Of a stretch of 64,000 nt of DNA, positions 9,600 through 45,191 are shown one piece after another; the first letter of the stretch is position 1, and each line of letters begins with the position of its first letter. The translations under genes were made by a program, and so were the position numbers. The notes under the pieces were generated by a model. The model worked only from the letters and a program-made list of their open reading frames with translations. It did not search any database and had not been told where the DNA came from. Origin of the DNA: Octopus bimaculoides (lineage: Eukaryota); NCBI RefSeq assembly GCF_001194135.2, contig NC_068990.1, positions 77,987,458-78,051,457 of the forward strand, in the 5' to 3' direction.

Positions 9600-11045
9600 A
9601 TTCTATTGTTATCATCATCATCGTCATCGTCGTCATCATGACTATTGGTATTATTTTTCCTTCGTAACTGTGTAGGTAAAAATGCACCAGAATCTTTAGT
9701 CATTTGTCAAGTCACAAGGACCTCAGACAGATGATATTTTCCTTAAGATGTATGTTGTATCCAATAAGACTGCTTTTTGCAAGACATCAATCTTGCATGG
9801 GATTTCCAGTTGCCTTAAGAAGTTTTGAAGTTTCAATGGGATTGAGTCCAACTCTCCGATCACCACTGGTATCACTTTTACATTACCCTCTTGCATTCCA
9901 TACAGTCTTGCCATTTCCACTTTCAATTCAGAGTACTTGGTGATTTTTTCAACTTCTTTATTCACAACATTCATGTCATTTGGTATGGCTACATCAATGA
10001 TCTGACAGTATTTGTCTCTCTTATTCACTATGACAATATCCGGCCGACGGTGTTCGATTACACGATCCATCTGAAAATCATAGTCCCGGAGTATTGTTAC
10101 TTTTCCATCCTCCTGCATAACTTTACTTGATACATGCTCATACCAGTTCTTTGATACTTCAAATTGGTATTTACAGCATAAGAGCCAATGAAGATACACA
10201 CACACTTTATCACAGCAGCGTTTGTATTTTTGGGGGCAAGGCTCTCATATCCACTTACCAAGTGGGTTACATTTTCCACACTCTTTCCACAGATTCTGCA
10301 TTTCTGGGTGTCAGAAGTTTTATAGGTGTTATGCTTCACTGAATTGGTAGCAAGAGCCTGATCTTTTGCAGCAAGGATCAGGTTTTTTATGATACACTTC
10401 AAATCACCTCACTCAAGCCATGCCCACGATGCCGTATTATCCTTAACGTCTTGTGTATGCCTTTCAAACTGTCCATGCATTTTCATTTCAAGAAGGTCTT
10501 CTTTTCTCTTCTCCTCAGCTCTCTGGTTAAACTCTTCCTTGCCCATCATTTCATCTACATTTACACCCATATCTTTGATGACATATTGCAGCAGGTCTTC
10601 ATCACTATTTATCAAATACTCAGCAAGCATTCTCCTTTCACTCCTTATATAATGGTCTATACTAATTACTCCTCTTCCACCATTCTTTCTTTTTATATAC
10701 AGTCTGTTTACGTTTGCTTTAGTGTGTAGTACCCCATGCAGCATCATCAACTTTCTCATCCTTCTGTCCAGTGTTGATATTTCCTCCTTAGTCCATTTGA
10801 GGATGGATGCACTATATCTGACCACCGCAACTGCCCCGATATTCATTGCGGTAATCAAATTTTAGGCAATCAGGTTGGATTTCAACACCATCTTCACCCT
10901 TTTTTTGATATGCCTCGCTGACCTTGACTTTCATTTCTCTGTGTAGAATGTCATCCAGCTCCAAAATCCCTAAATATCTATACCCACTACCGTTGGGTTC
11001 ACCCATGGTCTCTCCTGATGGTAACCACAATCCTCTGCAGGCTGA
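9600..11045 (-). mobile_element. R4/Dong-like non-LTR retrotransposon (RT C-terminus, CCHC knuckle, restriction-like endonuclease), 5'-truncated and frameshifted
   Basis: YRYLGILE; LHTKANVNRLYIKRKNGGRGV; CRICGKSVENVTHLVSG; RRPDIVIV..QIIDVAIPND...KYSEL (PD-(D/E)xK). The 5' junction abuts (TTA)n at about 11045-11080. Confidence 0.9.
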
Positions 11046-15786: not shown

Positions 15787-17080
15787 TTAGGTTGTCAAGA
15801 AAGTTCTTGCGGTTTTTAACCTTTAAATTCAGATGCGCATATCTCGGCTCAAACAAAACTTTATTAATCAAAATAAACACCATCAGAATCAACACACTTT
15901 TGCCAACGTGAAACAAGTTTATTTATGCCAGTAGCATAAAAATCCTGCATTCTGGTGGCAATGAAGTCGTTGAAGGCGTGTTTGGCATTGTCTTGGTTTT
16001 TGAAGCATTTCTCAAGCAGGAAGTTGTCAAGATGCTTGGAAAAGTGGTAGTCGGTAGGTGAGAGGTCTGGTGAGTATGGCAGATGAGGCAGAGTTCTGTA
16101 GCCCAATTCGTTCAACTTCTGCAGGGTCAGTTGTGCGACGTGCAGCTGAGCATTGTCATGGGGAAGAATTGGTCCTTTTCTATTGACTAATGCTGGCTGT
16201 TGTTGTCGGAGTTTCTTATGCATTTCATCCATTTGCTGACAGTACTTCTCCACCGTAATGGTTTTGCCTGGATCTAAAAAGCTGTGATAGATGATCCGGC
16301 TGCAGACCACCAAACAGTCACCATGACCTTCTTCTGGTGCAACTTTGGCTTTGGGAAGTGCCGTAGAGCTTCATCAGTGTCCAACCACTGAACTGAGCAT
16401 CACTGGTTGGCATAAAGAATCCACTTTTCATTGCAAGTCACAATCCGGTCGAGAAACGGGTCGTTCTTGTTGCGTAAAAGAAGAGAAGACAACACTTCAA
16501 AACAGAATTTTCTTTTTGTTGTCATTCAATTTGTGCAACACCCATTTCTCAAGTATTTTTGTTTTTCTAATCTATTTCAAGAGGCTGGAAATTGTCATAT
16601 ATGTTACATCTAATTCAGAAGCATGCTCTCGAACAGTTGTGTGTGGATTGGCTTCAACTAAGGCTCTTAGCTGTTCGTTGTCAACATCCGATGGCCAACC
16701 ACTACGCTTACCATCTTCAAGACTCTCGTCACCGCTATGAAATTTCTTGAACCACCATTGTATTGTACGTTCATTAATGGTTTAATGGTTCCTTGGGCCA
16801 AACGCATCATTGATATCAGGAGCTGTTTTAGCAGCTTTCGGCCTAGCTTGAACTGGAATAAGAAAATTGTGTGAATTTGCTTTTTGTCTGCGTGGTATTC
16901 AATGTTCCGGAAAAAATAGCCTAATTATTCAAAAAGAAAAAGATTAACATGATTAGATAGAGTGAAAAACGGGCTTTAAAATGATATATAAATTCAAAGT
17001 AATTTAGCAAAAATTAATTTGAAAATACATCATTTAAAACCAAAATTAAAAATTCCACAAGAACTTTCTTGATAACCTAA
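15787..17080 (-). mobile_element. Full-length (1294 bp) degenerate mariner, Hsmar1/cecropia-like D,D34D transposase
   Basis: TIRs ttaggttgtcaagaaagttcttgcgg (15787) and ccacaagaactttcttgataacctaa (ends 17080). TA follows the right TIR; TG precedes the left. Transposase reads DKKQIHTIFLFQFKLGRKAA...ERTIQWWFKKF...KWVLHKL...HDNA...YSPDLSPTDYHF...RWQKCVDSDGVYFD*, with stops and indels. Confidence 0.95.
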
Positions 17081-20925: not shown

Positions 20926-21095
20926 CTCCAGTCCACTCAGCTGGCAAAAGTGAGTAATCCAGCAACCGACTAGCATCCCATCCAGGTGGAGAATATATAT
21001 GCCATTGAAACCAGGAAACTGGCACTATTCATGTATATGACTTGGGAAGGATCTATATCCCTTTTTCTAAAATATTAAACCATATGTAATGTCAT

Positions 21096-21392
21096 GGAGG
21101 CGCAATAGCCCAGTGATTAGGGCAGTGGACTCGCGGTCAGAGGATCGCGGTTTCGATTCCCAGACCAGGCGTTGTGAGTGTTTATTGAGCGAAAACACCT
21201 AAGCTCCATGAGGCTCCGGCAGGGGGTGGTGGCGACCCTTGTTGTATTCTTTCGCCCCAACTTTCTCTCACTCTTTCTTCCTGTTTCTTGAGTAACACTG
21301 CGATGGACTGGCATCCCGTCCAGCTGGTGGTAACACATACGCCATAGAAACCGGGAAACTGGGCCCATGAGCCTGGCTAGGCTTTGAAAGGG
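21096..21392 (+). mobile_element. SINE family C (tRNA-derived head ggaggcgcaatagcccagtgattagggcagtggactc)
   Basis: A-box/B-box-like head. Copies at 8810-9110(+), 38545-38925(-, different 3' part) and 45820-45880(-). Contains gcgatggactggcatcccgtccag. Confidence 0.85.
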
Positions 21393-21541
21393 AGACATTT
21401 TTTTACATTTATATGTAATGTCATGTTATAGATAATGGGTGTATGGTTAATGAAGATACTTTGAGCCAGTGTCTTCTACTATAGCCCAAGGTCAGCCATT
21501 GCCTTGTGAGGGAATATGGGAGACAGATAGTGCACAGAAGC

Positions 21542-21771: not shown

Positions 21772-21854
<83 letters not shown>

Positions 21855-22197
21855 GTGTGTGTATGTGTGCAAGCGTGTTGCACGCATGTGTGTGTGTGTA
21901 TGTGAGTATGTATGTGGGTATGTATATATCTTTTGGTGAATGTGTGGGTGAGCATGTGTGTGTTTCAAGTGAGGGTCGATGAGTATATACATATAAGTGC
22001 ATATACGTGGGTGTGCGGGCGCGCATGTGTATGTATGGACTGGTGTGCTTACGCGAATACTATGGACATTTTTACTCCCTTACCTTTACTCCCTCCCCTC
22101 ACTTAGCGGTCATTCTAATTGCTCTTTTGTCTTAATAACAGTCAATTATACAGTAATTTCCCTTTGTTTAACAGTCATTTTCATAGCATTTTTTCAA

Positions 22198-22270
22198 TGG
22201 CCAGATAACTGAAGAGATGGCTGCGTGGATTTCACCCTGGCATCCGAAACTCAGAGTTTTATCATGGCTA
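22198..22270 (+). ncRNA. Type I hammerhead ribozyme motif with intact catalytic core, predicted cleavage GUU after 22258
   Basis: CUGAAGA at 22209-22215 and GAAA at 22246-22249. Stem III ACUC-A-GAGU, H17=U. Stem I UGGCCAGAUAA/UUAUC(A)UGGCUA has 11 bp with one bulge. Stem II G-C plus AUG/CAU with a bulged C and a longer apical hairpin. Folded by hand. Confidence 0.75.
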
Positions 22271-22385
22271 CCGACTAATTGTCACATATTATTTACAGAT
22301 ATCAAACTTAAAAATAAATACTGAGTTTGATTTGATTAATTAAGTAAAAGAAATACGCAGATATAAAAGAGTGTGTGTGTGTTTC

Positions 22386-22417
<32 letters not shown>

Positions 22418-22587
22418 CATGTGTGCGTGCATGTGTAAGTGAGTGTCTTTCATATTTACATTTACAGCCTAAAATCACCAGTTCTCTAAATATAAACATG
22501 ACAGACATGGGCACACACTCACACACACACAAACACACACATACACTCACACACACACACTCACACACACACTCACACACACACACG

Positions 22588-22632
<45 letters not shown>

Positions 22633-22998
22633 CTACATTGGTTTTTGCATTTTTAATAAGAAAGTTATCTCAGTAAAATGTGACACTGTAACCTTATTTC
22701 AATGTTTGTTCTTTTGAGCAACTGTTACTTTGATCAATCAATATTGATCAATTGCTTTATTTTGTTTGTTCTTTTTTCTGTCAACTATTTTTGATAAATT
22801 GTACTTTGGTTGACTGATTTCCATCAGCTGTCAAAGACATGTGCTGTATGGTAAAAACTTTGTTTCTCAACCACATGGTTCCAGTTTCAGTTCCACAGTG
22901 CAACACCCTGGGCAAGTGTCTTCGACTATAGCCCTGGGTCAATCAAAGCCTTGTGGGTGGATATGGTAGATAGAAACTGAAAGAAGCCAGTCATTTAC

Positions 22999-23039
<41 letters not shown>

Positions 23040-23491
23040 NNNNNNNNNNATGTATGCGTGTATGTATGTATGTATATACGTATGTATATATAGATGTATG
23101 TATGTATATTCATGTATGTGTGTATGTATGTATGCGTGTATGTATGTATGTATATATAGTCCCAAAATAAAGAAAACACAAAGATGAGGTGAAAAAATAA
23201 CAAATGGAGCATCTTAGTGTCTCTGTTTGTCCCCACCACTGCTTGAAACTGGTGTTGGTTTGTTTATGTCCCTATGATATAGTGGTTTGGCAAAAAGAGA
23301 CTGATAGAATAAGTACCCGGCTTTAAAAAAAATAGATGTTTGGGTTGATTTCTTGACTAATCCTTCAAGACAAGTGCTTCAGCTTCGCCAGAGTTCAATG
23401 ATTGACACAAGTGAATGATAAAAGACAAAATAAGATATCGAATTTTATAGTAAAACAAGTACAATCAACTGAATTGAATCGCATTCCAATA

Positions 23492-25367: not shown

Positions 25368-25528
25368 GAGTTCTAAAAGATTATCTAAGGGAACTTCCAG
25401 AACCACTATTTACTAATGTGTTGTACCAAATGTTGTTGGACGCTCTTACCGTGCGTCTTCCAGGAGACCCTGATGGAAGTGCCAAACTCATGCTTAGTAT
25501 TTTAGAATGTTTACCCAAGGCTAATCAG
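25368..25528 (+). CDS. SYD-1: Internal coding exon of a SYD-1/SYDE (RhoGAP100F-like) Rho GTPase-activating protein, central RhoGAP domain
   Basis: Pyrimidine tract + CAG acceptor (ttttcttctctttccag|) and CAG|GTAACA donor. Phase-1 start reads (G)VLKDYLRELPEPLFTNVLYQMLLDALTVRLPGDPDGSAKLMLSILECLPKANQ. LKDYLRELPEPL is the RhoGAP core motif, and the following segment resembles Drosophila RhoGAP100F/SYDE as I recall them. Confidence 0.93.
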
Positions 25529-25950
25529 GTAACACTTATTATTTTTTTTATTCTATATTAATTTTGGAAAGATTTCATAATCGGTCGAGTATCAGAACAA
25601 AATGGCTTGTGGTTTTAATTATAGCCCTTTACATTCAGAGTTCAAATTATGTCATGGTCAACTTTGCCCTTCATCCTTCTGGGGTCCATGAAATAACAGT
25701 AAAAAACTATGGTCAGTTTGATCAACTAGTGTACTTTACCAATCTACCAGAAACTGCACCAGGTTCTTTTTTATAAGATTCTTGTTTTAATCTGATCTAA
25801 ATTAAAACCATTCACATTAGTTTCATGCTAATTTATATTCCTAATATAGTTTAATAATGCTAAAGTTGGGAAAGTGTCTTCTACTGTAGCCTCAGACCAA
25901 CCAAAGCCTTGTGAGTGGATTTGGTAGACAGAAACTTAAAGAAGCCTGTC

Positions 25951-25991
<41 letters not shown>

Positions 25992-27616
25992 ACAAATAAT
26001 AAATGAGTATATGCATATATACGTACAGGTATGTGCATACCTATGTCTACCTGTATATATAGGTGCATACCTGGGTACAGGACATTTCAAACAAAACGTA
26101 GACAAGAAAATAATAATAACCAGAGTACAGAAAACACACAAGCCACATAGAGAACATTTTCCTTCATCAGCTACCCCCGTTTTAACACCGGCGTTTCGAA
26201 GGTCACAATCAAATAACAAACAAGTAAAAGAATAAAAGAATATATATCAAAAGAGTGTATATACACACATATATACATAAAACTGTATTTATTTATATAA
26301 ACTGGAAGTAGTTAAAGGATGAATCCACCTGATAAATTCTTACAATATTTGTTCTGACTAAGGCAGCAAGCTAGTAAAACTGTTAGCCCGCCATGTAAAA
26401 TGCTATTTTTACGTTCTAAGTTCAAATGCTATTGGGATCAACTTTACTTTTCATCCTTACAGGGTCAATAAAACAAGTACCTGTTGAGCAACAGAGGTTG
26501 ATTTCATTGACTTAGCCCTTTCCCCGCATTTGCTGGCCTTCTGCCAAAATTTGAAACCAATATTTGTTGTGACACATTTTGAGTTCAAATCCCACCTAAG
26601 TCAACTTTGCTATTAATTCCTCTATAGCTAATAAAGTACCAGCCAAGTATAAACAAAACCCCTACCACCTCTTACCAAATTTCAGCCTTTCTTTTCTATG
26701 TTGGGCTGTGGATATCAGTGAGCTGAACAAAATTCCTTACAGAACTTTGTGATAGCTGTTTTACATTGTGTGTTCAAACATTGCAGGGGTCCATTATGCC
26801 TTTCATTTTTAAGAAATTATTAATCCTTTCTATAATAGGCACAAGATCTGAAATTTTGGGAGAGGGGTCAGTTGATTACATTGACCCAGTGTTCAACTGG
26901 TACTTATTTTGTTGACCCTCAAAGTTGATCTTGGCAGAATTTGTGCTCAGAACTTAAAGATACACAAAAAGCTGTTGAGCATTTTGTGTGGTGTGCCAAA
27001 GATCCTGCTAACACACCACCTTTAAAAACTTATTAATTACTATCAATTTAAAAGCAGTGAGCTGGCAGAATCATTAGCATGTCAGGCGAAATGCTTTGCA
27101 ATATTTCATCTGTCTTTACGTTCTGAGTTCAAATTCCGCCGCGGTTGACTTTGCCTTTTATCCTTTCTGGGTCGATTAAATAAGTACCAGTTATGCACTG
27201 GGGTCAATATAATTGACTTAATCCATTTGTCTGTCCTTGTTTGTCCCCTCAGTGTGTAGCTCCTTGTGGGCAGTAAAGACATAAGAATCATTAGCATGCC
27301 GGACAAAATGCTTAGCAGTATTTCTTTTAGCTCTTTACATTCCACGTTCAAATTCTGCCTAGGTTGACCTTGCCTTTCATCCTTTTAGGATTGATAAAAT
27401 CAGTACCAACTGAGCACTGGGGTCAATGTAATTGACTAAACCTCCCCACCAAAAAAATTTCAGGCCTTGTGCTCATAAAAGGCAGAATTAATAGTTTTCG
27501 ATTTAAGTATCTCTCTTGTCATAAAATAAGATATCATTACAATGGTTCTTTAGAATCATTAGAATAACAGACAAAATGCTATGTGGTATTCAGTTGCATC
27601 CTTTTACATTCTGCAT

Positions 27617-27845
27617 TTAACTCTTTAGCATTCAGACCAGCCATATCCAGCCTAAATATTTGACCTCCAATGTGTTCAAAATTGGTCAGATCCAACCTCT
27701 TAAACTTACCCCAGAATATCATTCCCGAAGTAACGAGTCACATCATGGAAATCTCACAGCTATGAAATAATGCATGATTAATTCAATATAATGTGATTAA
27801 ATAAGCATCACATTTAGTAGAATGATCTGAATACAAAAGGGCTAG
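27617..27845. mobile_element. piggyBac-like (TTAA-flanked) MITE; relatives at 32075-32433 (internally duplicated) and 45668-45820 (truncated by a SINE)
   Basis: Left end ttaa+ctctttagcattcaga, inverted right end tctgaatacaaaaggg. The body (cagatctggcctctcacac...gctacaagataatgcatgatt) is shared among the copies. Confidence 0.6.
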
Positions 27846-28545
27846 AATCCCCTTACGAATCAACTTTACATTTCATTCTTTTGAGATCAAAAAATTAAAT
27901 ACCAGTCAAATAATGAAGCTCATTCAATTAACTATAGCCACCTCTAAATATTTATTGTTTTATATCATAAATCAGTAGACCCTTTTGCTTCCTATTTTAT
28001 TCAGATAGACCCTCACAGCTATTCGATGATTAAAAAATCCTGTTATATTTTGCTAATTAAATATATTATAAGGAATTGTATTTATTGTTTTAATTTTTTT
28101 GCATGTTTCAGTCAGTTGACTGTGGCCATGCTGGAGAACCACCTTACAAAGAATAAGTATTTTGTAAGCCTGGTACTTATTCTATTGGCCTCTTTTGCCA
28201 TACCGCTAAGTTACAGAGACATAAACACATCACCATCGGTCGCCAAGCAATGGTGGTGGGGAGAAACACAAAAACAAAGACACATACACATAAATATATA
28301 TATATATACACACATACCTACACATACATGCATCCACACACATACACANNNNNNNNNNAGATAAATATATGTATACAAATAAATGATTTGAAGAAGATTT
28401 TTGTTTTATAAAAAAAGCCATTACTTTTATACCTAGTGTGCATTTTCTTTGTTTCTTTTTACTTTTCCCTTATATAGGTTGACTTTGCCTTTCATCCTTT
28501 TAGGATCGATAAAATAAGTTCCAACTGAGCACTGGGGTCTCTCTC

Positions 28546-28990
28546 CAATGCCGCCAGGAGTGCTACATCATTTGTGTGATGTGGAAAATATTCCATCAAT
28601 ATTGCACAAATGATGTCAGCATCAATTTTAAAATCCATCCAAGACTTGGCCCCCGTGCTATCCTCCCACTACAAAAATCGAACTTGGAACACACAGCAAC
28701 ATTATGTCACAATTACTTTGCTTCAACCAGTCAAGCTCTCGTTAATACCATACCAAAATACATCAAAACAGAAACGGATCCCATAAAATTCAAATGTTCA
28801 CTGGATAAATTTCTTCAAAATATCCCAGACCAACCTCCTTCACCCAGATATGTCTCCAACAATAATAACTCTTTGCTAGAGTGGGCCATGGTGCCCCATA
28901 TATGACTAAAAGACTTCACCAGGTGGTGCTATTAAGTTAGACATAGCCTAGGCCTAAACTGGCCGAAACCTATCAAAGTTATCAAAGTCA
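28546..28990 (+). mobile_element. CR1/L2-group LINE 3' remnant
   Basis: NTIPKYIKTETDPIKFKCSLDKFLQNIPDQPPSPRYV..NSLLEW resembles the CR1-group C-terminal FKxxLDKFLxxIPDQP. A short tandem tail (tatcaaagt)2 follows. Confidence 0.7.
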
Positions 28991-29689
28991 TATATATATA
29001 TATATATACAACAGTTTTCTTTCAGTTTCCATGTACCAAATCCACTCACAAGGCTTTGGTCGGTTTGAGGCTATAGTAGAAGACACTTGCCCAAGGTGCC
29101 ACACAGTGGGACTGAACTCAGAACCATGTGGTTGGGAAGCAAGCTTCTTACTACACAGCCATGCCTGTGCTTATTTTTTGAAAAATTCTTAAAATATTTT
29201 GTATATTTAATAAGTAGAACCAATTATTTGTGCATACATTTTAACAACAAAATCTTGTATGAACTCCAAGGGTCATGTAGGCCCTCAAAAGTCATATGGA
29301 CTGTGCTTGAGAACCATTACTATAAATGAAATTTATGTTTTTTATTGCTTTAGTAATTGCATTGCATGATGGGAATGTATTGCCATATTGAAGTGGTGTG
29401 ATACAGAATTCTTGTATTTCTTTGTCATCAGAGAGAGTGAGTCATAGATATTTAGAGATAGTTATTTATGTGTGTGTATGTATAACTAAATGTATCTATG
29501 TGCATATGTTTGTGTGTGTGTGTGTGTGTGTGTATAACTAAATGTATCTATGTGCATATGTGTGTGTGTGTGTATACACACACACGCACACACACATGTA
29601 TATGTTGATGTTTGTTTTTATGATCAGTTATAATAAAAACAGTTTTACATTAATTTGATGGGTTTACTCTATACTTTTGTAGAATAAAA

Positions 29690-29829
29690 TTTATTATTCT
29701 TAAACAAGATTATCATTGATAGTGATTTCAAAATTTTAGCCAGTTAAGCCATTGTCATCAGTCTGACAATGGCTTAACTCACCGAAATTTCAAAGTCACT
29801 ATCAATAATATTCTTGTTGAATAATAAAT
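29690..29829. repeat. Short hairpin repeat (about 65-bp arms, loop tcagtc)
   Basis: gttaagccattgtca / tgacaatggcttaac is perfect; the outer arms ttattattc..gatagtga / tcactatc..gaataataa are imperfect. Confidence 0.8.
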
Positions 29830-30031
29830 ACACACACACACACACACACACGTGGTGATGTGCCTGGCTGTATACTAAGAAGCTTGCTTCCAAAACACAT
29901 GGTTCTGGGTTCAGTGCCACTGCATGGCACCTTGGGCAAGTGTCTTCTACTATAGCTTCAGGCTGACCGCAGCTTTGGATTTGGTTGATGGAAACTAAAA
30001 GATGTTTGTCGTATGTATGTATATATGTATG

Positions 30032-30069
<38 letters not shown>

Positions 30070-30744
30070 NNNNNNNNNNNNNNNNNNNNNNNNNNNNNNN
30101 NNNNNNNNNNNNNNNNNNNNNNNNNNNNNNNNNNNNNNNNNNNNNNNNNNNNNNNNNNNNNNNNNNNNNNNNNNNNNNNNNNNNNNNNNNNNNNNNNNNN
30201 NNNNNNNNNNNNNNNNNNNNNNNNNNNNNNNNNNNNNNNNNNNNNNNNNNNNNNNNNNNNNNNNNNNNNNNNNNNNNNNNNNNNNNNNNNNNNNNNNNNN
30301 NNNNNNNNNNNNNNNNNNNNNNNNNNNNNNNNNNNNNNNNNNNNNNNNNNNNNNNNNNNNNNNNNNNNNNNNNNNNNNNNNNNNNNNNNNNNNNNNNNNN
30401 NNNNNNNNNNNNNNNNNNNNNNNNNNNNNNNNNNNNNNNNNNNNNNNNNNNNNNNNNNNNNNNNNNNNNNNNTCTTTGTGCAGCTGAAGATTGCTCTGCA
30501 TTTTAAATTGATGTAATGGTTGCATTGTTTAATTAAATGGAGTTGCATGAAACGATTGTACTGCATTACCTCTGGATATCCTTGTTGCTTATTTTGATTA
30601 TATATATATATATATATATATTATTATAAAATCTGGTAATTAGTCATATATTAATTAATATCGATTAATTATCAGGAGGCCAGCACATCTAAAGAATCAA
30701 AGAGATTCAGAAATATTATCTGCAATCTCAGGGGATTAAGGTAC

Positions 30745-30776
<32 letters not shown>

Positions 30777-31814
30777 ATATATCTATGTGTGTGTGTCTTT
30801 ATGTCTGTGTTTATCCCCCACATCACCACTTGACAACTGGTGTTGGTGTTTCTATGACGTGTAACTTAGCAGTTTGGCAAAAGAAACCAATAGAATAAGT
30901 ACTAGGCTTTAAAAAAATAAGTCCTATAGTCAATTTGTTGGACTAAAATCCTTCAAGGCAATACTCTAGCATGGCCACTGTCAAATGACTGAAATAAGTA
31001 AAAGAATAAAAGAATATATATGCATGTATATATGTATATATATGCTCTCCATTCTCACTCTTTGTCTCTCTCTTTCATTCTCTCACTATACACACACACA
31101 CACATATATATATATATACATGTGTGTGTATTTACCATCATCATCATCATCATCATTTTATGTCTGCCTTCCTTGCTAGCATGGGTTGGACGGTTTAACT
31201 GAGGACTGACAAGCCAGGAGGCTGTACCAGACTCCAATTTGATCCGGCAAGGTTTCTACAGTTTGATGCCCTTCCTAATGCCAACCACTCTGAGAGTGCA
31301 GTTGGTGCTTTTTATATCCCACCACTATGGGGACCAGTCAGGTGGCATTGGCATCGACCACACTTCAATGGTGCTTTTTACATGTCACCAGCATGGGAGC
31401 TAGTCAGGCAGCACTGGCATTGACCATGCTGGAATGATACTTTTTATGTGCTACCAGCATGGGTGCCAGTCAAATGGCACTGGCATCAGCCATGACTACA
31501 ATTTTGCTTGACTTAACAGGTCTTCTCAAGCACAGTATATTGCCAAAGAAATGAAGGGTATTTTTAAACATGCTGGTAATGTGACACTGGCATCAGCCAC
31601 TGCTACGATCTCATTTGATTTGCCAAGTCTTCTCAATCACAGCATGTCTTCAAAAATCTCAGTCGCTTGTCATTGCCTCTGTGAGGCCCAACATTCAAAG
31701 GTCATACTTCACCACTTTTATGCAATTGATCCTATGGAAACTGATATCATTTTTTGTAATTTGTTCTTGTCATGTCCCATCACTCCTAAACCTTGTGAAA
31801 AAAGTTTTTAAAAT

Positions 31815-31819
31815 CATCG

Positions 31820-31883
<64 letters not shown>

Positions 31884-32060
31884 GTGATTAAAACTCACAG
31901 CTTATTTTGCTAGGTATGACAGAAAGTGTCAACTGTCCACACCCAGCAGACTAAAGTGACACTTGTTTACTGGTCATGCTTTAAGAATTCTGCAAAGAAT
32001 TCTTGCAGTTCCAAGCAATGCTGATTTTTGTAGGTGTTCTACCTTCACACTTACCGAAAT
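31815..32060 (-). mobile_element. 3' end of another R4/Dong-like LINE with (AAT)n tail
   Basis: Minus strand reads VKVEHLQKSALLGTARILCRILKA*, then a short UTR and a long (AAT)n. Confidence 0.8.
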
Positions 32061-32794
32061 ATTTTACTTCTTTTATGATCAAACCAGCCAGATCTGGCCT
32101 CTCACACCAACCCTACAATTTCATTCTAAAAATTAACAGTTACCTCATCAAAATCTCAAAGCTACAAGATAATGCATGATTAATTAATGATGTGAACAAA
32201 TGAGGAATATTTTTAAGAGAATAATGTGAATGCTAAAAGCCCAAATATCCTACCTGTTTTATGTTCAAACCAGCCAGATCTAGCCTCTCACACCTGCCCT
32301 ACCATGTCATTTTAAAATTTAACAATCACATCAATAAAATCTTGAAGCTACAAGATAATGCATGATAAGCTTAAAGCAATGAGATTAAATAAGGATTACA
32401 TTTGACAGAATAATCTGAACGCTAAACGGTTAATCCCATTCTCCCTCAGTTTCCTATAAATTCAATAGGGAGCAGCCCATCTCTCCTCCATTGGAACCTT
32501 CCTCTCCAAACGGAAATTTGAAGAAGTCAATGAGGGCTTGGCTTAAAAGAAAGGTGTCTGTTCTGTTCTCAGATTTTTCAGTCTTGTCCACCACACAGGC
32601 TCTTTGTCATAGCAACCACCAGATAGAGGGAGAAAACAAAAAAAAAACAAATTCTTGTAATTTCCAACCAAAGAGAAATGGAGAAACAACCAAAACCCCA
32701 CCCCCCACCCATGAGAGACTTCGGCTGGTAACTGGCTCTGTCTTATATGTGATAATGTTGACGATGACTAGAGTAACAACAATGATAACAATGT

Positions 32795-32901
<107 letters not shown>

Positions 32902-33504
32902 TCGACTACCAAGTGATCATCATTATCACTATCATCAGCACTCCCATCATCATCATCACTACCACAACACCACCACCACCAACACCACCACCAACACCAC
33001 CACCAACACCACCACCAACACCACCACCACCAACACCACCACCACCAACACCATCACCTCCTCCTCCTCCACCATCACCATTGTCATCATCATCATCATC
33101 ATCATCATGGTGATGGTGACTAGTTATATACTGTCTGTACATCCATTTAGTTGAAACAACAGAAGCTATGTCAAACAAGGTTATATATATATATATGACC
33201 ACCCAAGAGTATAAACATTGTAACTCCTGGGATTTTCTGCCCAAACTCTTTTTCTTACATTAGCTACGTACACTGGTCACTGACACAGGCTGAAAGCTCT
33301 TTCGGTAATTGAAGATCTGCATATACAGTTCTAGATTAGAGAATCGGCTGTTAACATATGAAAGATCCATGTGGGTGTGGACCAGTGTATTGGCCATGTA
33401 TGAATATATGTGTGTATGTATGCATGCATGTATGTCAGTGTGGGGGCAGTATATTTGTGTGCATGTGTGTGTGTATGTGTGTGTGTGTGTGCGCATGCGT
33501 GCGT

Positions 33505-33713
33505 GTGTGTATTTTCTTAGAATTCCATGTTTATGTGTAGATACATGTGTATATTTATGTGCATGTTATGATATATATGTATGTGTGTATGTGTGTATGA
33601 GTGAGTGCGTATGTGTGTGTTTGTGTGTGTGTGTGTGTGTGTGCATTTTCTTAGAATTCCGTGTATTTGTAAAGATATATGTGTATATTTATATGCATGT
33701 TATGGTACATATG

Positions 33714-33763
<50 letters not shown>

Positions 33764-33860
33764 TGTGTATGCTTGTATTTTCTTAGAATTGCATGTTTAT
33801 GTGTAGATACATGCATATATTTATATGTATGTTATGGTATATATGTATACATGTGCGTTG
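33505..33860. repeat. Three-copy minisatellite (period about 133 bp) with embedded (GT)n
   Basis: The unit core ttttcttagaattccatgtttatgtgtagatacatg recurs at about 33511, 33645 and 33778. Confidence 0.85.
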
Positions 33861-34836
33861 TGTGTATGTGTCTGTTGTGTGTGTGCGTGTGTGTGTGTGT
33901 ATGAGTGTGTAACTATACATATATATATAAATATATCACTAAGATCACATACATATATGCATGCATGCATGCACACACACTCACATACGCACACACACTC
34001 ACATACGCACACTAACACATACATATGTATGTGAGTTTATGTATACATGTATGTAAGTGTATATGACTGTAAACAGTCTATGCATGTATATCAAACATAT
34101 CAATATATATGATGTATAATATCGAATACTTTCTTTTTCATCAAATTACAATGATCTGTGATTATATATATATATANNNNNNNNNNNNNNNNNNNNNNNN
34201 NNNNNNNNNNNNNNNNNNNNNNNNNNNNNNNNNNNNNNNNNNNNNNNNNNNNNNNNNNNNNNNNNNNNNNNNNNNNNNNNNNNNNNNNNNNNNNNNNNNN
34301 NNNNNNNNNNNNNNNNNNNNNNNNNNNNNNNNNNNNNNNNNNNNNNNNNNNNNNNNNNNNNNNNNNNNNNNNNNNNNNNNNNNNNNNNNNNNNNNNNNNN
34401 NNNNNNNNNNNNNNNNNNNNNNNNNNNNNNNNNNNNNNNNNNNNNNNNNNNNNNNNNNNNNNNNNNNNNNNNNNNNNNNNNNNNNNNNNNNNNNNNNNNN
34501 NNNNNNNNNNNNNNNNNNNNNNNNNNNNNNNNNNNNNNNNNNNNNNNNNNNNNNNNNNNNNNNNNNNNNNNNNNNNNNNNNNNNNNNNNNNNNNNNNNNN
34601 NNNNNNNNNNNNNNNNNNNNNNNNNNNNNNNNNNNNNNNNNNNNNNNNNNNNNNNNNNNNNNNNNNNNNNNNNNNNNNNNNNNNNNNNNNNNNNNNNNNN
34701 NNNNNNNNNNNNNNNNNNNNNNNNNNNNNNNNNNNNNNNNNNNNNNNNNNNNNNNNNNNNNNNNNNNNNNNNNNNNNNNNNNNNNNNNNNNNNNNNNNNN
34801 NNNNNNNNNNNNNNNNNNNNNNNNNNNNNNNNNNNN

Positions 34837-35124
34837 GATCTTACTTGGCTTGCCGGGTCTTCTCACGCACAGCCCATTTCCAAAGGTCTCGGTCCGTAGT
34901 CATCGCCTCGGTGAGGCCCAATGTACGAAGGTCTTGCCTCACCACCTCAGCCCAGGTCTTCCTGGGCCTACCTCTTCCACGGGTTCCCTCAACTGTTAGG
35001 GTGTGGCACTTTTTCACGCAGCTATCCTCCTCCATTCTCACCACATGTCCATACCAGCGCAATCGTCTCTCTTGCACGCCACAACTGATGCTTCTAATGT
35101 TCAGCTTTTCTCTCAAGATACTTA

Positions 35125-35127
<3 letters not shown>
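34837..35127 (-). mobile_element. Well-preserved RTE-clade LINE ORF C-terminal fragment, running into a gap
   Basis: SILREKLNIRSISCGVQERRLRWYGHVVRMEEDSCVKKCHTLTVEGTRGRGRPRKTWAEVVRQDL contains the LRWxGHVxRM and RGRPRKTW motifs. Confidence 0.9.
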
Positions 35128-35173
<46 letters not shown>

Positions 35174-35474
35174 CGCACTCAAGCATATACATATATATAT
35201 GTGTATGTACACTTATATATTAACTTTTTATGTTTTGTATGTGCATTTGGTTGTGTATGTGTGTGTGTGTATGTGTTCTGATACTAGTTATTCCGCAAAA
35301 GGTTTTAGCCAAGTATCCATACAAATATTAATCTGAGTAGATAAGAGAAATTCTCAATGGATATGAATTCACCAAGTAAAGCTAAACATAGGCATGGGTA
35401 TGGTTGTGTGGTAAGAAGCTTGCTTCCCAACCACATGGTCCCGGGTTCAGTCCCGGGTTCAGTCCCACCATGTG

Positions 35475-35604
35475 CAGGGCTGGCCCTAGGGTTGCTGGTG
35501 CTACAGTCAAGCAGAACTTGTCTTTGTTACATCCTCCTTGGTGCCCCTTAGCACAAGGCATCCTGGGTGACTGCCTGAGTTGCCGGTACCTTGAGCCAGC
35601 CCTG
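35475..35604. mobile_element. 130-bp hAT-like MITE inserted into a SINE
   Basis: TIRs cagggctggc / gccagccctg. The 8-bp flanks accatgtg and accgcata can both derive from accgcgtg by transition mutations. Confidence 0.7.
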
Positions 35605-35722
35605 ACCGCATAGCACTTGGACAAGTGTCTTCTACTATAATGTCAGGTTGACCAAAGCCTTGTGAGTGGATTTGGTAGACAGAAACTGAAAGAAGCCAGC
35701 CATATATGTATATAATGATATA

Positions 35723-35761
<39 letters not shown>

Positions 35762-36155
35762 GGGAGTAAGCACATGAAATGTGCAACAAGGTGGAAAAAG
35801 GAGTACTCAAATACCAGAGGTAGAGTAATATGCTTTATTTAAAAGCAGCAGAAATATAAGAAAAGAATCTTACTCTGAGTTTCACGTTCCCGTTNNNNNN
35901 NNNNNNNNNNNNNNNNNNNNNNNNNNNNNNNNNNNNNNNNNNNNNNNNNNNNNNNNNNNNNNNNNNNNNNNNNNNNNNNNNNNNNNNNNNNNNNNNNNNN
36001 NNNNNNNNNNNNNNNNNNNNNNNNNNNNNNNNNNNNNNNNNNNNNNNNNNNNNNNNNNNNNNNNNNNNNNNNNNNNNNNNNNNNNNNNNNNNNNNNNNNN
36101 NNNNNNNNNNNNNNNNNNNNNNNNNNNNNNNNNNNNNNNNNNNNNNNNNNNNNNN

Positions 36156-36199
<44 letters not shown>

Positions 36200-36805
36200 T
36201 ATACATGCATATATGTACATACATCTATACATAAATAAATGCATATGTGAGCACAAGACATCTTAAAACGTGTACAACAAAAAAATATGAAGTACGGGTA
36301 CACGGAATAGGAACTAATTTTTCGAACAACAAAAGACACAATTGGAAAACAAGACAAACAATATAAGGAACGACCCTTCATCAGTTGTTGGCTGTTTTTC
36401 TACTCTCATATTTTGAGCATTTAACAACAATATACGCTTTCGATAAAACATTTGCTCCCACAAAGCAAATTAAAAATAAAATTTGGGATTTTGCGGAGGG
36501 TCAAAATTGGTAACACAAACAGGACAGTGCAAAAAAACAGGAAGGGCTGCTAAGCCTAAATGAGGTTGTGGTGGCAAACACGTAAATCAAGCTTGGACAG
36601 GAGACAGACAAGAATATGTCTTCCATGTTCAAGCTACAACGGAGAGAAAGAAAGAAACAGAAGTTAGGAGAAGAAAGAAAGATGGCCGAATGTCACGTGG
36701 GAGCCACATGAGCAAGAGAGGAGGAGTGAGGGAGAGAGAGAGCATGATAGGAAAAAATTCCAGTGAACAATAATAACATCTTACCTCTGCTAGGTCAGCA
36801 AAACA

Positions 36806-36836
<31 letters not shown>

Positions 36837-37640
36837 CTTTTATTCTTTTGTTCTTTTACTTGTTTCAGTCATTTGACTGTGGCCATGCTGGAACACTGCC
36901 TTGAAGAGTTTTTAGTCGAATGAATTGACTCCAGTATTTATTTCTTTTTAAAGCCTGGTACTTATTCTATCGGTACTTTGTGCCAAACTTCAAAGTTACA
37001 GGGACGTAAACACACTAACACCAGTGAGCCAGCAGTGATGGGATGGGGGACAAACACAGACACAAAGGCACACACACATAGATGTGTGTGTGTGTATAAA
37101 CAACAGGCTTCTTTCAGTTTCTGTTTACTAAATCCCCTCATAAGGCTTTGGTTGGCTCAGGGCTTTAGTAGAAGACACTTGCCCAAGGTGCAATGCTGTG
37201 TGACTGAACCAGGAATCATGTAGTTGGAAACCAAGCTTCTTACCATGCTATATATATGCTACAAAAATGTTTAAGAAAACATGAAGACGAGGGGTAGGAA
37301 ATGAACAAATGGTATATATTATGTTTATGCTCAGGTGAAATATGAAGTCTTACATTTCAAGGATATGTTCTTCTTCAGAAAGAATCAATCACTGCATGTA
37401 TGCATGCGTGTATGTACGTATGTATATAAAGATGATATGTAAAAGTGGAGTACACTAGCAGTTAAATAGTACAAGGGAGATAATCACTTTTTCATAACAT
37501 CTGGTGGGATTATAAGTTTGAATTTGAAATTGAGGAATTTAAAAAATGCACAGAATACACATGCTTAATTTTCTACTTTTGCTTACTCGTTACAAAGGTC
37601 TTAAAGTATCTAGTCTTAAGTAATCATGTGTATGTGTGTG

Positions 37641-37711
<71 letters not shown>

Positions 37712-39078
37712 ATATATATATTGATATATTGTTGTACCCCACGCCACCTCCTGATACCACCAACAGGCTCCAATAGTCCATGTTAGTAGCTCAGGAGACC
37801 TCAGGGAAGCTAACTTGCTTAGAGAAGAAGTGCTAGTGAAAGAAGTCAGAAGAGTTGACCATAACATGCAAAACCGTTGAGTGCAACCAAAATAGAACTT
37901 TAATTAAGAGGTGAATAAATATTTATGGAATAAACAGGCAGTTCTTTAGAGATTTTTTAGAGTTCTTTCATTCGCCTTTGAAATGTGTAGACTTTTGGTG
38001 AGCTCTACTTTTATTCACCAATCTAATGATTCTTTTTTTTTATCTCTTTATTTTTTCAACTGGACTCTGTTGTTACTCCTGAATTTACATTAGTCCAGTA
38101 ACTATTCTGCATTCTTTACATGGCCAAGTTCACACTGACTATTTTCACAGCAAGTTTAATACCTTCCACTTTACAAAGACACCACTGTTCACATTAACTA
38201 CAGACATTCACCATTGCATCAAACTAACTTATAACCATTCTCCTCGCAGCAAAGACACTACTGTTGATATTAACCACTGGCATTCGCCAACACAATACAT
38301 GTCCCACTTCTGACACCAATTACTGTTCAGCACGAACTGCTCAACTTCAACTGCATGGCACCAACCTCAACCAATATTCACATAAACCACTCATGTTGAC
38401 TTCCATTGCATCAACTTCCAGCAGACTCCAAACCAACCACCTCACTTATCAACACCACACATTAGCTAACAGTACAGACTCAATTGCCATGTGTTCAATA
38501 CTAGTATTTATATTTTGCCCACACAGTAAAAAGCATGTCAAAATCATTGTTGTTGTTGGCACTCTGTCGCTTACGACGTCGAGGGTTCCAGTTGATCCGC
38601 TCAACGGAACAGCTTGCTCGTGAAATTAACGTGCAAGTGGCTGAGCACTCCACAGACATGTGTATCCTTAACGTAGTTCTCGGGGATATTCAGCATGACA
38701 AGGCTGACCCTTTGAATTACAGGCACAACAGAAACAGGAAGTAAGAGTGAGAGAAAGTTGTGGTGAAAGAGTACAGCAGGGTTCGCCACCATCCTCTGCC
38801 GGAGCCTCGTGGAGCTTTAGGTGTTTTCACTCAATAAACACTCACAACGCCCGATCTGGGAATTGAAACCGTGATCTTATGACCACGAGTCCGCTGCCCT
38901 AACCACTGGGGCATTGCACCTCCACATGTCAAAATCATACCGCCTACACTTTAAACAGTCACAATGAATTAATTTTTCATTTATTTTGCAAAACCAGAGA
39001 GCAGTGTTCAAATCTGCATCACATGAATGAGAAATTATCTGAATATAATTTTTCATTCATAACAAAATATTTATATAC

Positions 39079-39357
39079 GAAAGTAAAAAGCGAGAAAGTA
39101 GAATGCTTCTGACAATGTGGAAAGTTTTATAAAACCATTATATTTCCGGCACAAAGGCCCATCTTGTGAAGAAAATGTCTGGGAAACGTCCAGTTGTGTA
39201 GGAAATTTGAAAGAGTTAACAGAACCTACATACCTGGACATTTCCCAGACTGTTTTTCTTCTGAAGATGGGCCTTTGCCCCTGAAATATAAAGGTTTTAT
39301 TAAACTAACTTTCTGCATTGTCAGAAGCTTTCTATTTACTCTCTTTTTACCTTTTTC
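39079..39357. repeat. Fold-back element (about 125-bp arms, roughly 80% identical); each arm carries a minimal HHR-like motif
   Basis: Right arm (+) 39257-39294 reads UCUU-CUGAAGA-U-GGGC(CUUU)GCCC-CU-GAA-AUAU-A-AAGG. The left arm (-) has a decayed copy (CACAAGA...GAA-AUAU-A). Confidence 0.75.
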
Positions 39358-39649
39358 AATATAGCAATGATTCAAGTGAACTACAATACTCATATATATG
39401 TACATAGGACAGCTGGCATGCCACAGCCAGTCATTTTAATCTTACATCAACCCTGTATATGCAATAAGATATTTTCATTGACTTGTCCATCATTCCTGCT
39501 ACAAATCATTTTGCAACATAGACGAGGTGCATTTAATCGACTATCACAAGATTCTGGGTTTAGTCTTATTGCATGATATCTGGACAAGTCTCTTTTACCT
39601 TAGCTCCAGACTAACACAAAACAACCTGCTTGGCTGAAATTGAGTTGAT

Positions 39650-40113
39650 CAGTGCTTCTCAACCATTTCTTACCCATGGATCCCCTTCGATTTCTGTTTT
39701 ACATGGGTGGACCCTCAAAACCATTTGATGTTTGAAAAATTTCCCATTAGATTCTTATAATTAAATACTTGTACCAGTGCCACTTAACAGTACTCACGCC
39801 AACATCACTAAAATCACCCAGCACACACTTTAAAGTGGTTGGTGTTAGGGAGGGTATCCAGCTATAGCAGCCAGGCCAAATCAGACTGGAACCTGGCATA
39901 GTTCTCTGGCTTACCAGCTCTGGTCAAACCATTCAACCCATTCCAGGAAGGAAAACAGACCTTAAGGAATGACAATAAACGGGAATTTTATTAAAAATGG
40001 TCAAAATTTTTATATATTGTAGAAAAATAACTAATTTATTGCTCATAAACTTTAGCAACAAAATCATATATGGACCCCACCAAGGGTCATGTGGACCCCA
40101 TTGAGAGCCACTG
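39650..40113. mobile_element. hAT-type MITE carrying a nested RTE-tail insertion (about 39790-39975)
   Basis: Termini cagtgcttctcaa / ttgagagccactg; degenerate 8-bp TSD gagttgat / gagtaaat. Confidence 0.7.
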
Positions 40114-41730: not shown

Positions 41731-41741
41731 TTGCCCCAGAG

Positions 41742-42697: not shown

Positions 42698-42735
<38 letters not shown>

Positions 42736-44680: not shown

Positions 44681-44733
<53 letters not shown>

Positions 44734-44992: not shown

Positions 44993-45191
44993 GATACGAT
45001 GACAATGGTGCTGAACCACCTGAAGAAGGTTGCCAGCAAAAGTGATTTAAACAAGATGACCCCCGAGAATGTGGCTGTCTGTTTCGGACCCGTGCTACTG
45101 TGTCCATCCCCGTCGACATCAGCTGACTTAGACTTCAGGAAACATATCGATGTACTTAAATACTTGCTTGAAATATGGCCAGATGACTTCA
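44993..45191 (+). CDS. SYD-1: Next coding exon of the same SYD-1/SYDE-like RhoGAP (C-terminal part of the RhoGAP domain)
   Basis: Acceptor ctgttgttctctttcatgccag| and donor A|GTAAGT. Phase-0 start matches the phase-0 end of 25368-25528. Reads [66 protein letters not shown]. [17 protein letters not shown] is the RhoGAP motif; DFxxHIxVLxYLLxxWP is SYDE-like. Confidence 0.93.

What the first reader, a model, noticed from the sequence alone, without database searches (positions are those of the whole stretch)
22198..22270. Near-canonical type I hammerhead ribozyme, sense to the synaptic RhoGAP gene SYD-1
Seen in sequence: CUGAAGA and GAAA core boxes with no substitutions, an 11-bp stem I with one bulge, a palindromic stem III (ACUC-A-GAGU), a GUU triplet and a closed stem II. 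It lies about 3.1 kb upstream of exon 25368, which has no start codon and so is internal; the motif is therefore probably intronic. Established: type I HHRs occur in Penelope-like pLTRs and retrozymes, and a few intronic HHRs in amniotes are conserved. Inference: if active, it would cut the SYD-1 pre-mRNA co-transcriptionally and could affect splicing or output of a presynaptic-assembly gene. I cannot tell whether it has been described in cephalopods.
Basis: partly seen in the sequence, partly recalled or inferred. Interest (0 to 1): 0.85.

Follow-up and report, generated by a model that had tools for sequence, protein, structure and literature searches.

The report
Lone hammerhead-like motif in SYD-1 intron
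A single sequence in a long intron of a synaptic RhoGAP gene has every conserved base of a hammerhead self-cutting RNA, but one stem joins the core abnormally, there is no partner copy and no conservation could be shown, so it is most likely an inert look-alike or a dead transposon relic rather than a gene switch.

Summary
The motif is at 22198-22270 (+) as described. It has CUGAAGA, GAAA, a GUU site (cut 22258/22259) and an 11-bp stem I with one bulged A.

"Near-canonical" overstates it:
- An extra C (22245) sits between helix II and G12.
- Helix II is 4 bp followed by three mismatches.
- The proposed 1-nt loop in helix III is impossible; the realistic form is 3 bp plus a CAG triloop, which is not stable alone.
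- Rfam gives no hammerhead hit, even at E<=10.

Three null models put a motif this good at about 0.001-0.01 per 64-kb window. That is unusual for one window, but about 200 would be expected by chance in a genome of about 40,000 such windows, if this genome is that large.

It is a single copy. No tandem partner, Penelope-like ORF or repeat family is visible.

The context claims hold: it lies sense-strand, 3.1 kb upstream of an internal RhoGAP exon of a SYD-1/SYDE-type gene.

The source species and its relatives are absent from the searchable collections, so conservation in related species could not be tested. Six orthologous loci from distant invertebrates show no conserved ribozyme.

Best reading (0.7): an inert or very slow hammerhead-like sequence, either chance or a retroelement relic. 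A regulatory ribozyme is possible but unlikely (about 0.03).

The parts
22198..22208 (+). Helix I, 5' strand (UGGCCAGAUAA)
   Evidence: Pairs with 22259-22270. Pair probabilities are 0.55-1.0 in the ensemble. Duplex energy -10.9 kcal/mol.
22209..22215 (+). Core box C3-A9, CUGAAGA
   Evidence: Read directly and found by the pattern search.
22216..22244 (+). Helix II: GAUG/CAUC (4 bp), then G.G, C-G, U.U, G-C, C.C, then GUG/CAC closing a GAUUU loop
   Evidence: Constrained fold. The closing pairs have only 0.09 probability in the free ensemble, against 0.98 in a genuine control hammerhead.
22245..22245 (+). Extra unpaired C between helix II and G12 (or C11.1, if C22244 bulges instead)
   Evidence: Sequence. 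The only registers that close helix II need this insertion or a bulge.
22246..22249 (+). Core box G12 A13 A14 plus A15.1 (GAAA)
   Evidence: Read directly.
22249..22257 (+). Helix III, ACU[CAG]AGU; near-palindrome ACUCAGAGU
   Evidence: The hairpin is predicted unfolded alone. A self-duplex of two copies gives -7.4 kcal/mol with a central A.A mismatch.
22258..22259 (+). U17 and the predicted scissile bond 22258/22259 (GUU triplet 22256-22258)
   Evidence: Position follows from the core numbering. Cleavage was not tested.
22259..22270 (+). Helix I, 3' strand (UUAUCAUGGCUA) with bulged A22264
22046..22368 (+). About 320-nt unique island carrying the motif. It lies between TG-rich microsatellite sequence (21840-22040) and (TG)n/(CA)n (22371-22630).
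   Evidence: No second copy in the window. Microsatellite flanks seen. No exceptional folding, z = +0.25.
25368..25528 (+). Internal RhoGAP exon of the SYD-1/SYDE-type host gene, 3.1 kb downstream of the motif. A 10-N assembly gap at 23040-23049 lies between them.
   Evidence: Splice signals and translation. Pfam RhoGAP. Homologue names.
44993..45191 (+). Next RhoGAP exon. The start is set by the AG acceptor; the end is inferred from a GTAAGT donor.

Best explanation
This is a solitary hammerhead-like sequence in sense orientation inside a long intron (at least 25 kb) of a SYD-1/SYDE-type RhoGAP gene. It carries every invariant core base. Even so, it most likely does not act as a ribozyme of consequence, for four reasons.
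1. Helix III cannot hold together in one molecule, and no second copy is nearby to build the dimeric form used by short-helix-III type I hammerheads.
2. Helix II joins the core through an extra C next to the general base G12, and it is mismatched beyond 4 bp.
3. The cleavage triplet is the weak GUU.
4. The intron RNA is therefore expected to be spliced out and degraded like its surroundings.

On origin I split this reading roughly evenly. One possibility is a chance match (about 0.4). The other is a decayed, single-copy remnant of a retroelement-borne type I hammerhead, either a Penelope-like pLTR or a solo retrozyme, that landed in microsatellite-rich intron sequence (about 0.3).

Shown: the anatomy, the single-copy state within the window, the intronic sense position and the chance level. 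Inferred: low or absent activity, and origin.
For: - Anatomy and its flaws.
- No Rfam hammerhead hit at gathering score or at E<=10.
- Helix II closing pairs have 0.09 probability, against 0.98 in a genuine control.
- Helix III is unfolded as a monomer and gives -7.4 kcal/mol only as a duplex of two copies.
- No second copy or tandem repeat in 64 kb.
- No Penelope-like RT or GIY-YIG ORF was recognisable among the reading frames listed for 14-32 kb. This was judged by eye. Only four transposon-type ORFs were scanned against Pfam, and the only transposon-type match was a mariner transposase.
- The island does not fold like a retrozyme or viroid-like rod, z = +0.25.
- A motif this good arises at about 0.001-0.01 per window. 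That is about 200 chance instances in a genome of about 40,000 such windows.
- Six orthologous loci from other invertebrates carry no related motif upstream of the same exon.
- The literature reports that Penelope-like-element hammerheads with short palindromic helix III show no or very low cleavage as single motifs (PMC4209133; PMC6765202).
Against: - The per-window chance level is low, and the motif is by far the best in the window (-16.3 kcal/mol against -9.5 for the runner-up).
- It has features I did not select for that are typical of natural hammerheads: a G10.1-C11.1 pair, C15.2-G16.2 (GAAAC...GU), and a near-palindromic helix III.
- Stem I has a bulge 5 bp from the core and helix II has an internal loop 4 bp from the core, roughly where loop-loop contacts sit in natural type I motifs.
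- Two genuine type I hammerheads found in L003 score worse on the same energy measure (-10.1 and -6.6). One reaches only 14.4 bits in Rfam. Their HHR-compatible ensemble fractions are similarly small. So neither the Rfam miss nor the competing fold refutes activity.
- Invertebrate hammerheads with a 2-bp helix III plus tetraloop are reported to cleave as monomers (PMC7229834).
- The microsatellite flanks fit the insertion bias reported for some Penelope-like clades (PMC8557442).
Confidence: 0.7

Rival explanations
1. It is a genuine, still active type I hammerhead brought in by a retroelement (a Penelope-like pLTR fragment or a solo non-LTR retrozyme monomer). It self-cleaves slowly as a monomer within the intron. 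Any effect on the host transcript is incidental and no host function is selected.
For: - The core is complete, G10.1-C11.1 and C15.2-G16.2 are present, and helix III is near-palindromic.
- It has the best HHR-type junction energy in the window, with p about 0.001-0.01.
- The island of about 320 nt lies between microsatellites, with an A-rich end followed by (TG)n, as retroposed copies in this window tend to have.
- Solo retrozyme monomers, many of them intronic, are described in 10.64898/2026.07.22.740005.
- Genuine type I hammerheads do occur in the same intron of another invertebrate (L003).
Against: - No other copy of the island or the motif in 64 kb.
- No Penelope-like ORF was recognisable nearby (by eye).
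- The architecture differs from Penelope-like-element hammerheads, which have an unpaired base between A9 and G10.1, a 6-8 bp helix II and a 4-5 bp helix I (PMC4209133). Here the extra base is on the G12 side, helix II is 4 bp plus mismatches, and helix I is 11 bp.
- The triplet is GUU.
- No Rfam hit.
Confidence: 0.2
2. It is a domesticated intronic ribozyme that cuts the SYD-1 pre-mRNA co-transcriptionally and tunes mRNA output. This would resemble the amniote intronic hammerheads or the CPEB3 ribozyme.
For: - Sense orientation inside an intron, 3.1 kb upstream of the next exon.
- There is precedent. Type I hammerheads are conserved in introns of RECK, CTCL and DTNB (PMC6155905). An intronic ribozyme in Cpeb3 has a half-life matched to the time the polymerase needs to reach the next exon, and inhibiting it raises expression (PMC10919898).
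Against: - No conservation evidence of any kind.
- The same intron in six loci from other invertebrates has no related motif. The only hammerheads found there (L003) are unrelated in sequence and look transposon-borne.
- The structural flaws and the missing dimer partner argue against the fast cleavage such a role would need.
- In Xenopus, retrozyme hammerheads are reported as depleted from introns (10.64898/2026.07.22.740005).
Confidence: 0.03

Closest known systems
Type I hammerhead ribozymes of metazoan retroelements (Rfam RF00163; Penelope-like-element pLTR hammerheads and non-LTR retrozymes)
   Same: - Type I topology with helix I open.
- Invariant CUGANGA / GAAA / UH core.
- G10.1-C11.1 and C15.2-G16.2 pairs.
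- A short, near-palindromic helix III that is unstable alone and could extend in a dimer (PMC4209133, PMC6765202).
   Different: - Single copy with no tandem or inverted partner, no pLTR or ORF context and no repeat family visible.
- The extra base is on the G12 side of helix II, not between A9 and G10.1.
- Helix II is a 30-nt stretch (29-nt hairpin plus the extra C) with three mismatches.
- Helix I is 11 bp.
- The triplet is GUU rather than GUC or GUA.
- There is no Rfam score.
Conserved intronic hammerheads of amniotes (HH9 in RECK, HH10 in CTCL; also DTNB)
   Same: Type I motif, sense strand, inside an intron of a protein-coding gene (PMC6155905).
   Different: Those are defined by strict conservation across birds and mammals and closely resemble the Schistosoma/Xenopus motifs. 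Here no conservation could be shown, the Rfam HH9/HH10 models do not match, and helix II is irregular.
CPEB3 intronic HDV-like ribozyme
   Different: It is a different ribozyme class, is experimentally active and is conserved in mammals. None of that is shown here.
Genuine type I hammerhead pair in locus L003 (unidentified invertebrate contig, ENA ERZ25069870)
   Same: It lies in the orthologous region upstream of the same RhoGAP exon, and one copy is sense. It was found by the same descriptor.
   Different: - The L003 motifs are compact, with a 4-bp helix II, a 5-nt loop 2 and a CGCG or UGUACA palindromic loop 3.
- They occur as two homologous copies with compensatory changes.
- One gets a sub-threshold Rfam Hammerhead_1 hit (14.4 bits).
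- They share no sequence with the window motif outside the core.

Membership tests
Hammerhead ribozyme, type I (Rfam RF00163, clan CL00010) | Invariant core C3 U4 G5 A6 N7 G8 A9 ... G12 A13 A14 ... A15.1-U16.1, with H17 not G | tested here: met
   CUGAAGA at 22209-22215, GAA at 22246-22248, A22249-U22257 and U22258.
Hammerhead ribozyme, type I (Rfam RF00163, clan CL00010) | Three helices around the core, with helix I open and helices II and III closed | tested here: met
   A constrained fold exists at -15.7 to -16.3 kcal/mol. Helix III is 3 bp plus a triloop and is unstable alone. Helix II is irregular.
Hammerhead ribozyme, type I (Rfam RF00163, clan CL00010) | Helix II abuts the core directly: A9|G10.1-C11.1|G12 with no insertion on the G12 side | tested here: not met
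   One extra C (22245, or a bulged 22244) is needed in every register that closes helix II. Whether this is tolerated is unknown.
Hammerhead ribozyme, type I (Rfam RF00163, clan CL00010) | Covariance-model score at or above the Rfam gathering score (34 bits) | tested here: not met
   No hammerhead family is listed at gathering score or at E<=10 on 301 nt or 91 nt. Caveat: a genuine control (L003) also fails gathering, at 14.4 bits.
Hammerhead ribozyme, type I (Rfam RF00163, clan CL00010) | Site-specific, Mg2+-assisted self-cleavage 3' of H17 | not testable with these tools
   Needs in vitro transcription or mapping of RNA ends.
Hammerhead ribozyme, type I (Rfam RF00163, clan CL00010) | Loop 1 / loop 2 tertiary contacts that give fast cleavage at physiological Mg2+ | tested here: inconclusive
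   A bulged A lies 5 bp into helix I and a G.G mismatch lies 4 bp into helix II, at about the right distances. No conserved loop sequences can be recognised from one sequence.
Penelope-like-element pLTR hammerhead | Lies in a pseudo-LTR flanking an RT plus GIY-YIG ORF, usually in tandem or inverted copies | tested here: not met
   No such ORF was recognisable by eye within 14-32 kb. No repeat of the island was found. Not tested with an RT or GIY-YIG profile, and a 5'-truncated solo fragment cannot be excluded.
Penelope-like-element pLTR hammerhead | Unpaired base between A9 and G10.1, helix II of 6-8 bp, helix I of 4-5 bp, palindromic 15.2-16.2 and loop 3 (PMC4209133) | tested here: not met
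   Only the near-palindromic helix III is present. The extra base is on the other strand, helix II is 4 bp plus mismatches, and helix I is 11 bp.
Non-LTR retrozyme | Tandem repeats of about 170-400 nt, each carrying a type I hammerhead | tested here: not met
   Single copy in the window with no tandem array. The island of about 320 nt has the right size for a solo monomer, but this needs the whole genome to test.
Conserved (domesticated) intronic ribozyme | Sense orientation inside an intron of the host gene | tested here: met
Conserved (domesticated) intronic ribozyme | Retention at the orthologous intron across related species | not testable with these tools
   The source species and its near relatives are absent from the collections. 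In distant invertebrates (L001-L008) no related motif is present.

The most novel reading that the evidence does not exclude
The motif is an active, lineage-conserved type I hammerhead co-opted in an intron of a presynaptic-assembly gene. It would cut the nascent SYD-1 pre-mRNA about 3.1 kb before the next exon and thereby set the yield of spliced mRNA. This would be an invertebrate counterpart of the CPEB3 and HH9 intronic ribozymes. It would use an unusual helix II/G12 junction that tolerates an inserted base.
Probability: 0.03. Interest if true: 0.75.

Novelty: new member of a known kind. Interest (0 to 1): 0.22.

Why it matters
If it were active and conserved, it would be the first intronic hammerhead tied to a synaptic gene outside amniotes. 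It would also be a natural test of how an insertion beside the general base G12 is tolerated.

As it stands, the finding mainly shows how easily a complete hammerhead core with three plausible helices turns up in a large repeat-rich genome. It also shows that family or orthologue evidence, not fold energy or a single-window p-value, is what separates real ribozymes from look-alikes. The genuine hammerheads in L003 score worse than this motif on energy and are convincing only because two copies covary.

Tried and rejected
- **Rfam scans.** Gathering score on the whole window, and E<=10 on 301 nt and 91 nt: no hammerhead hit. I do not treat this as a refutation, because a genuine control reached only 14.4 bits.
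- **Competing fold as refutation.** The MFE (-21.5) pairs core bases, and the HHR-compatible ensemble fraction is 4e-5. Rejected as decisive, because genuine controls give 5e-4 and 1e-3 and the Rfam consensus gives 2e-6.
- **Second copy, tandem repeat or repeat family.** None found in the window.
- **Penelope-like ORFs nearby.** None recognisable by eye. The one Pfam scan covered four transposon-type ORFs and found only a mariner transposase.
- **Retrozyme-like rod structure of the island.** Not seen, z = +0.25.
- **Fetching the same locus or orthologous intron from related species.** Exact look-ups of three window ORFs were not on record. A translated proxy of the motif region had no candidates. 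A LINE ORF had best hits of only 51-58% identity. The species and its near relatives are therefore not in the collections.
- **Exact-pattern scan of JGI metagenome contigs.** 0 hits.
- **Deep conservation in the orthologous intron.** Eight loci fetched, representing six distinct orthologous loci. Only L003 has hammerheads, and they are unrelated in sequence.
- **Second hammerhead-like core at 44040-44098 (-).** Rejected as a ribozyme. Helix II cannot close, and its 3' helix I strand is locked in a roughly 400-nt foldback.
- **Supplementary files of PMC8557442, for cephalopod Penelope-like consensus sequences.** None held.

Full report
**What is in the sequence.**
Window 22198-22270 (+) reads UGGCCAGAUAA-CUGAAGA-GAUGGCUGCGUGGAUUUCACCCUGGCAUCC-GAAA-CUCAGAG-UU-UUAUCAUGGCUA. 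In standard hammerhead numbering:
- C3-A9 is 22209-22215.
- G12-A14 is 22246-22248.
- A15.1 is 22249 and U16.1 is 22257.

Stem I is real and strong. It has 5 contiguous pairs next to the core, a bulged A22264, then 6 more pairs. The duplex energy is -10.9 kcal/mol and ensemble pair probabilities are 0.55-1.0. All invariant core bases are present.

**Where "near-canonical" fails.**
- *Helix II junction.* Thirty nucleotides separate A9 from G12. They close with GAUG/CAUC only if one C (22245) is left unpaired directly 5' of G12. Otherwise G22216 pairs with C22245 and C22244 bulges, which costs about 3.4 kcal/mol more.
- *Helix II body.* Beyond those 4 bp come G.G, U.U and C.C mismatches alternating with single pairs, then a 3-bp tip.
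- *Comparison with known variants.* Natural Penelope-like-element hammerheads often have an extra base, but on the other strand, between A9 and G10.1 (PMC4209133). I know of no natural precedent for one beside G12; this is from memory and not tested.
- *Helix III.* It cannot be ACUC-A-GAGU on a 1-nt loop. Sterically it is A-U, C-G, U-A around a CAG triloop, which RNAfold leaves unfolded. Two copies could form an 8-bp duplex with a central A.A mismatch at -7.4 kcal/mol.
- *Cleavage triplet.* GUU obeys the NUH rule, but from general knowledge it is a weaker site than GUC.

**Is it more than chance?**
I scored every CUGANGA...GAAA...UH occurrence by the minimum free energy of a fold forced into the hammerhead three-way junction, allowing 0 or 1 extra base on either side of helix II.
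- The motif is the best in the window at -16.3 kcal/mol. The runner-up scores -9.5.
- 1 of 1000 global dinucleotide shuffles and 0 of 1000 local shuffles reached that value. A Gumbel fit gives about 0.01.
- On the real window, 3 of 719 decoy cores (permutations of the two boxes) reached it.
- A rule-based descriptor gave 0.0033 hits per shuffled window.

So p is about 0.001-0.01 per 64-kb window. That is unusual for one window. At about 0.005 per window, it corresponds to about 200 equally good chance motifs in a genome of about 40,000 such windows.

**Database and thermodynamic tests, with controls.**
Rfam finds no hammerhead family at gathering score. It also finds none at E<=10 on 301 nt or 91 nt.

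While fetching orthologous loci I found two genuine type I hammerheads in L003, at 1685-1726 (+) and 2454-2495 (-). They are homologous copies with compensatory changes in helix III (C-G to U-A) and palindromic loops CGCG and UGUACA. I used them as positive controls.
- The better one reaches only 14.4 bits in RF00163, where gathering is 34.
- Their constrained energies are -10.1 and -6.6.
- Their HHR-compatible ensemble fractions are 5e-4 and 1e-3, against 4e-5 for the window motif and 2e-6 for the Rfam consensus.

Neither the Rfam miss nor the competing MFE fold (-21.5 against -15.7 kcal/mol) can therefore refute the motif. The one clear difference is helix II. Its closing pairs have probability 0.98 in the control and 0.09 here.

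**Context.**
- *Host gene.* It is on the + strand. Exon 25368-25528 has an AG acceptor and a GT donor. The exon starting at 44993 follows it. Together they match Pfam RhoGAP profile positions 58-146 of 148.
- *Gene identity.* The best named homologues are RhoGAP100F, SYDE and "synapse defective 1".
- *Intronic position.* The N-terminal part of the domain is not found anywhere in 1-25367. The motif therefore lies in sense orientation in an intron of at least 25 kb, 3.1 kb upstream of the next exon. A 10-N assembly gap lies between them.
- *Local setting.* The motif sits in a unique island of about 320 nt (22046-22368). TG-rich microsatellite lies on one side and (TG)n/(CA)n on the other, in a landscape of SINE-like repeats with microsatellite tails.
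- *Repeats and ORFs.* The island has no second copy in the window and no rod-like fold (z = +0.25). No Penelope-like ORF was recognisable nearby by eye. The Pfam scan covered only four transposon-type ORFs.

**Relatives.**
The source species and its close relatives are not in the searchable collections.
- Exact look-ups of three window ORFs failed.
- A translated proxy of the motif region had no candidates.
- A LINE ORF found nothing above 58% identity.
- A metagenome pattern scan found nothing.

The octopod assignment and conservation at the orthologous intron therefore remain untested.

Eight loci were fetched from other invertebrates, representing six distinct orthologous loci. No related motif lies within 10 kb upstream of the same exon. 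Only L003 has hammerheads there, and they are unrelated in sequence and look transposon-borne.

**How it most likely works.**
I commit to the reading that it does nothing of consequence (0.7).
- Helix III is of the kind that needs a second copy to form the active dimer (PMC4209133; PMC6765202). No partner exists in cis.
- The helix II/G12 junction is perturbed.
- The triplet is weak.
- No conservation is shown.

Within this reading, chance (about 0.4) and a decayed retroelement relic (about 0.3) cannot be separated without the genome.

Two rivals remain.
- *A slowly active, transposon-derived hammerhead with no host role (0.2).* Features I did not select for speak for it: G10.1-C11.1, C15.2-G16.2, the near-palindrome, and a bulge and an internal loop at the usual tertiary-contact distances. 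The microsatellite setting also fits (PMC8557442).
- *A domesticated regulator of SYD-1 splicing, by analogy with HH9/HH10 (PMC6155905) or the CPEB3 ribozyme (PMC10919898) (about 0.03).* Nothing found here supports it beyond position and strand.

**Verdict.**
The context claims are right. The functional inference is unsupported. At best this is one more member of a well-known kind.

Noticed in passing
L003:1685-1726 (+) and L003:2454-2495 (-): Two genuine-looking type I hammerheads in inverted orientation about 770 nt apart, on an unidentified invertebrate contig (ENA ERZ25069870). They lie about 8 kb upstream of the exon orthologous to window 25368-25528. Their flanks are homologous. Helix III shows a compensatory C-G to U-A change, with palindromic loops CGCG and UGUACA. 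Copy 2 has an A.C at the 10.1-11.1 position. No RT ORF lies between them, so this may be a non-autonomous hammerhead-bearing element.
   Followed up: partly
window 43886-44290 (hammerhead-like core at 44040-44098, minus strand): A roughly 400-nt near-perfect foldback (-224.5 kcal/mol), present once in the window. Near its tip is CUGAGGA...GAAAC-CUAG-GUC with a good stem I (6 bp, internal loop, 5 bp). However, helix II cannot close, and the 3' stem I strand is also part of a 31-bp arm of the foldback. It is antisense to the RhoGAP gene and about 900 bp upstream of the exon at 44993.
   Followed up: partly
window 15867-16370 (-): Remnant of a mariner-type transposase (Pfam Transposase_1, E = 3.9e-09).
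   Followed up: partly
window 9726-10861 (-): Two adjacent open frames of 173 and 150 aa that look like a LINE-type retroelement. They have no Pfam hit, and the best database relatives are only 40-58% identical. This shows the source lineage is missing from the protein collection.
   Followed up: partly
window 21462-21532 and 22909-22979; also 21095-21400: SINE-like repeats, each followed by a microsatellite tail: (ATCT)n, and (ACAT)n/(AT)n. A tRNA-like head at about 21095 is not called by ARAGORN. Related repeat-derived frames (…SGTEP.TMWLGSKLLTTQP…) recur across the window.
   Followed up: no
window: 17 runs of N, for example 2259-3066, 30070-30472, 50830-51798, 23040-23049: Many assembly gaps. 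One 10-N gap of unknown true size lies between the motif and the downstream exon, so the 3.1-kb distance is nominal.
   Followed up: no
window 25529-44992: The intron between the two RhoGAP exons is about 19.5 kb here. In the other invertebrate loci (L001, L003, L005) the next RhoGAP-matching ORF lies only about 2-6.5 kb downstream. The upstream intron exceeds 25 kb here and exceeds 10 kb in the other loci checked.
   Followed up: partly
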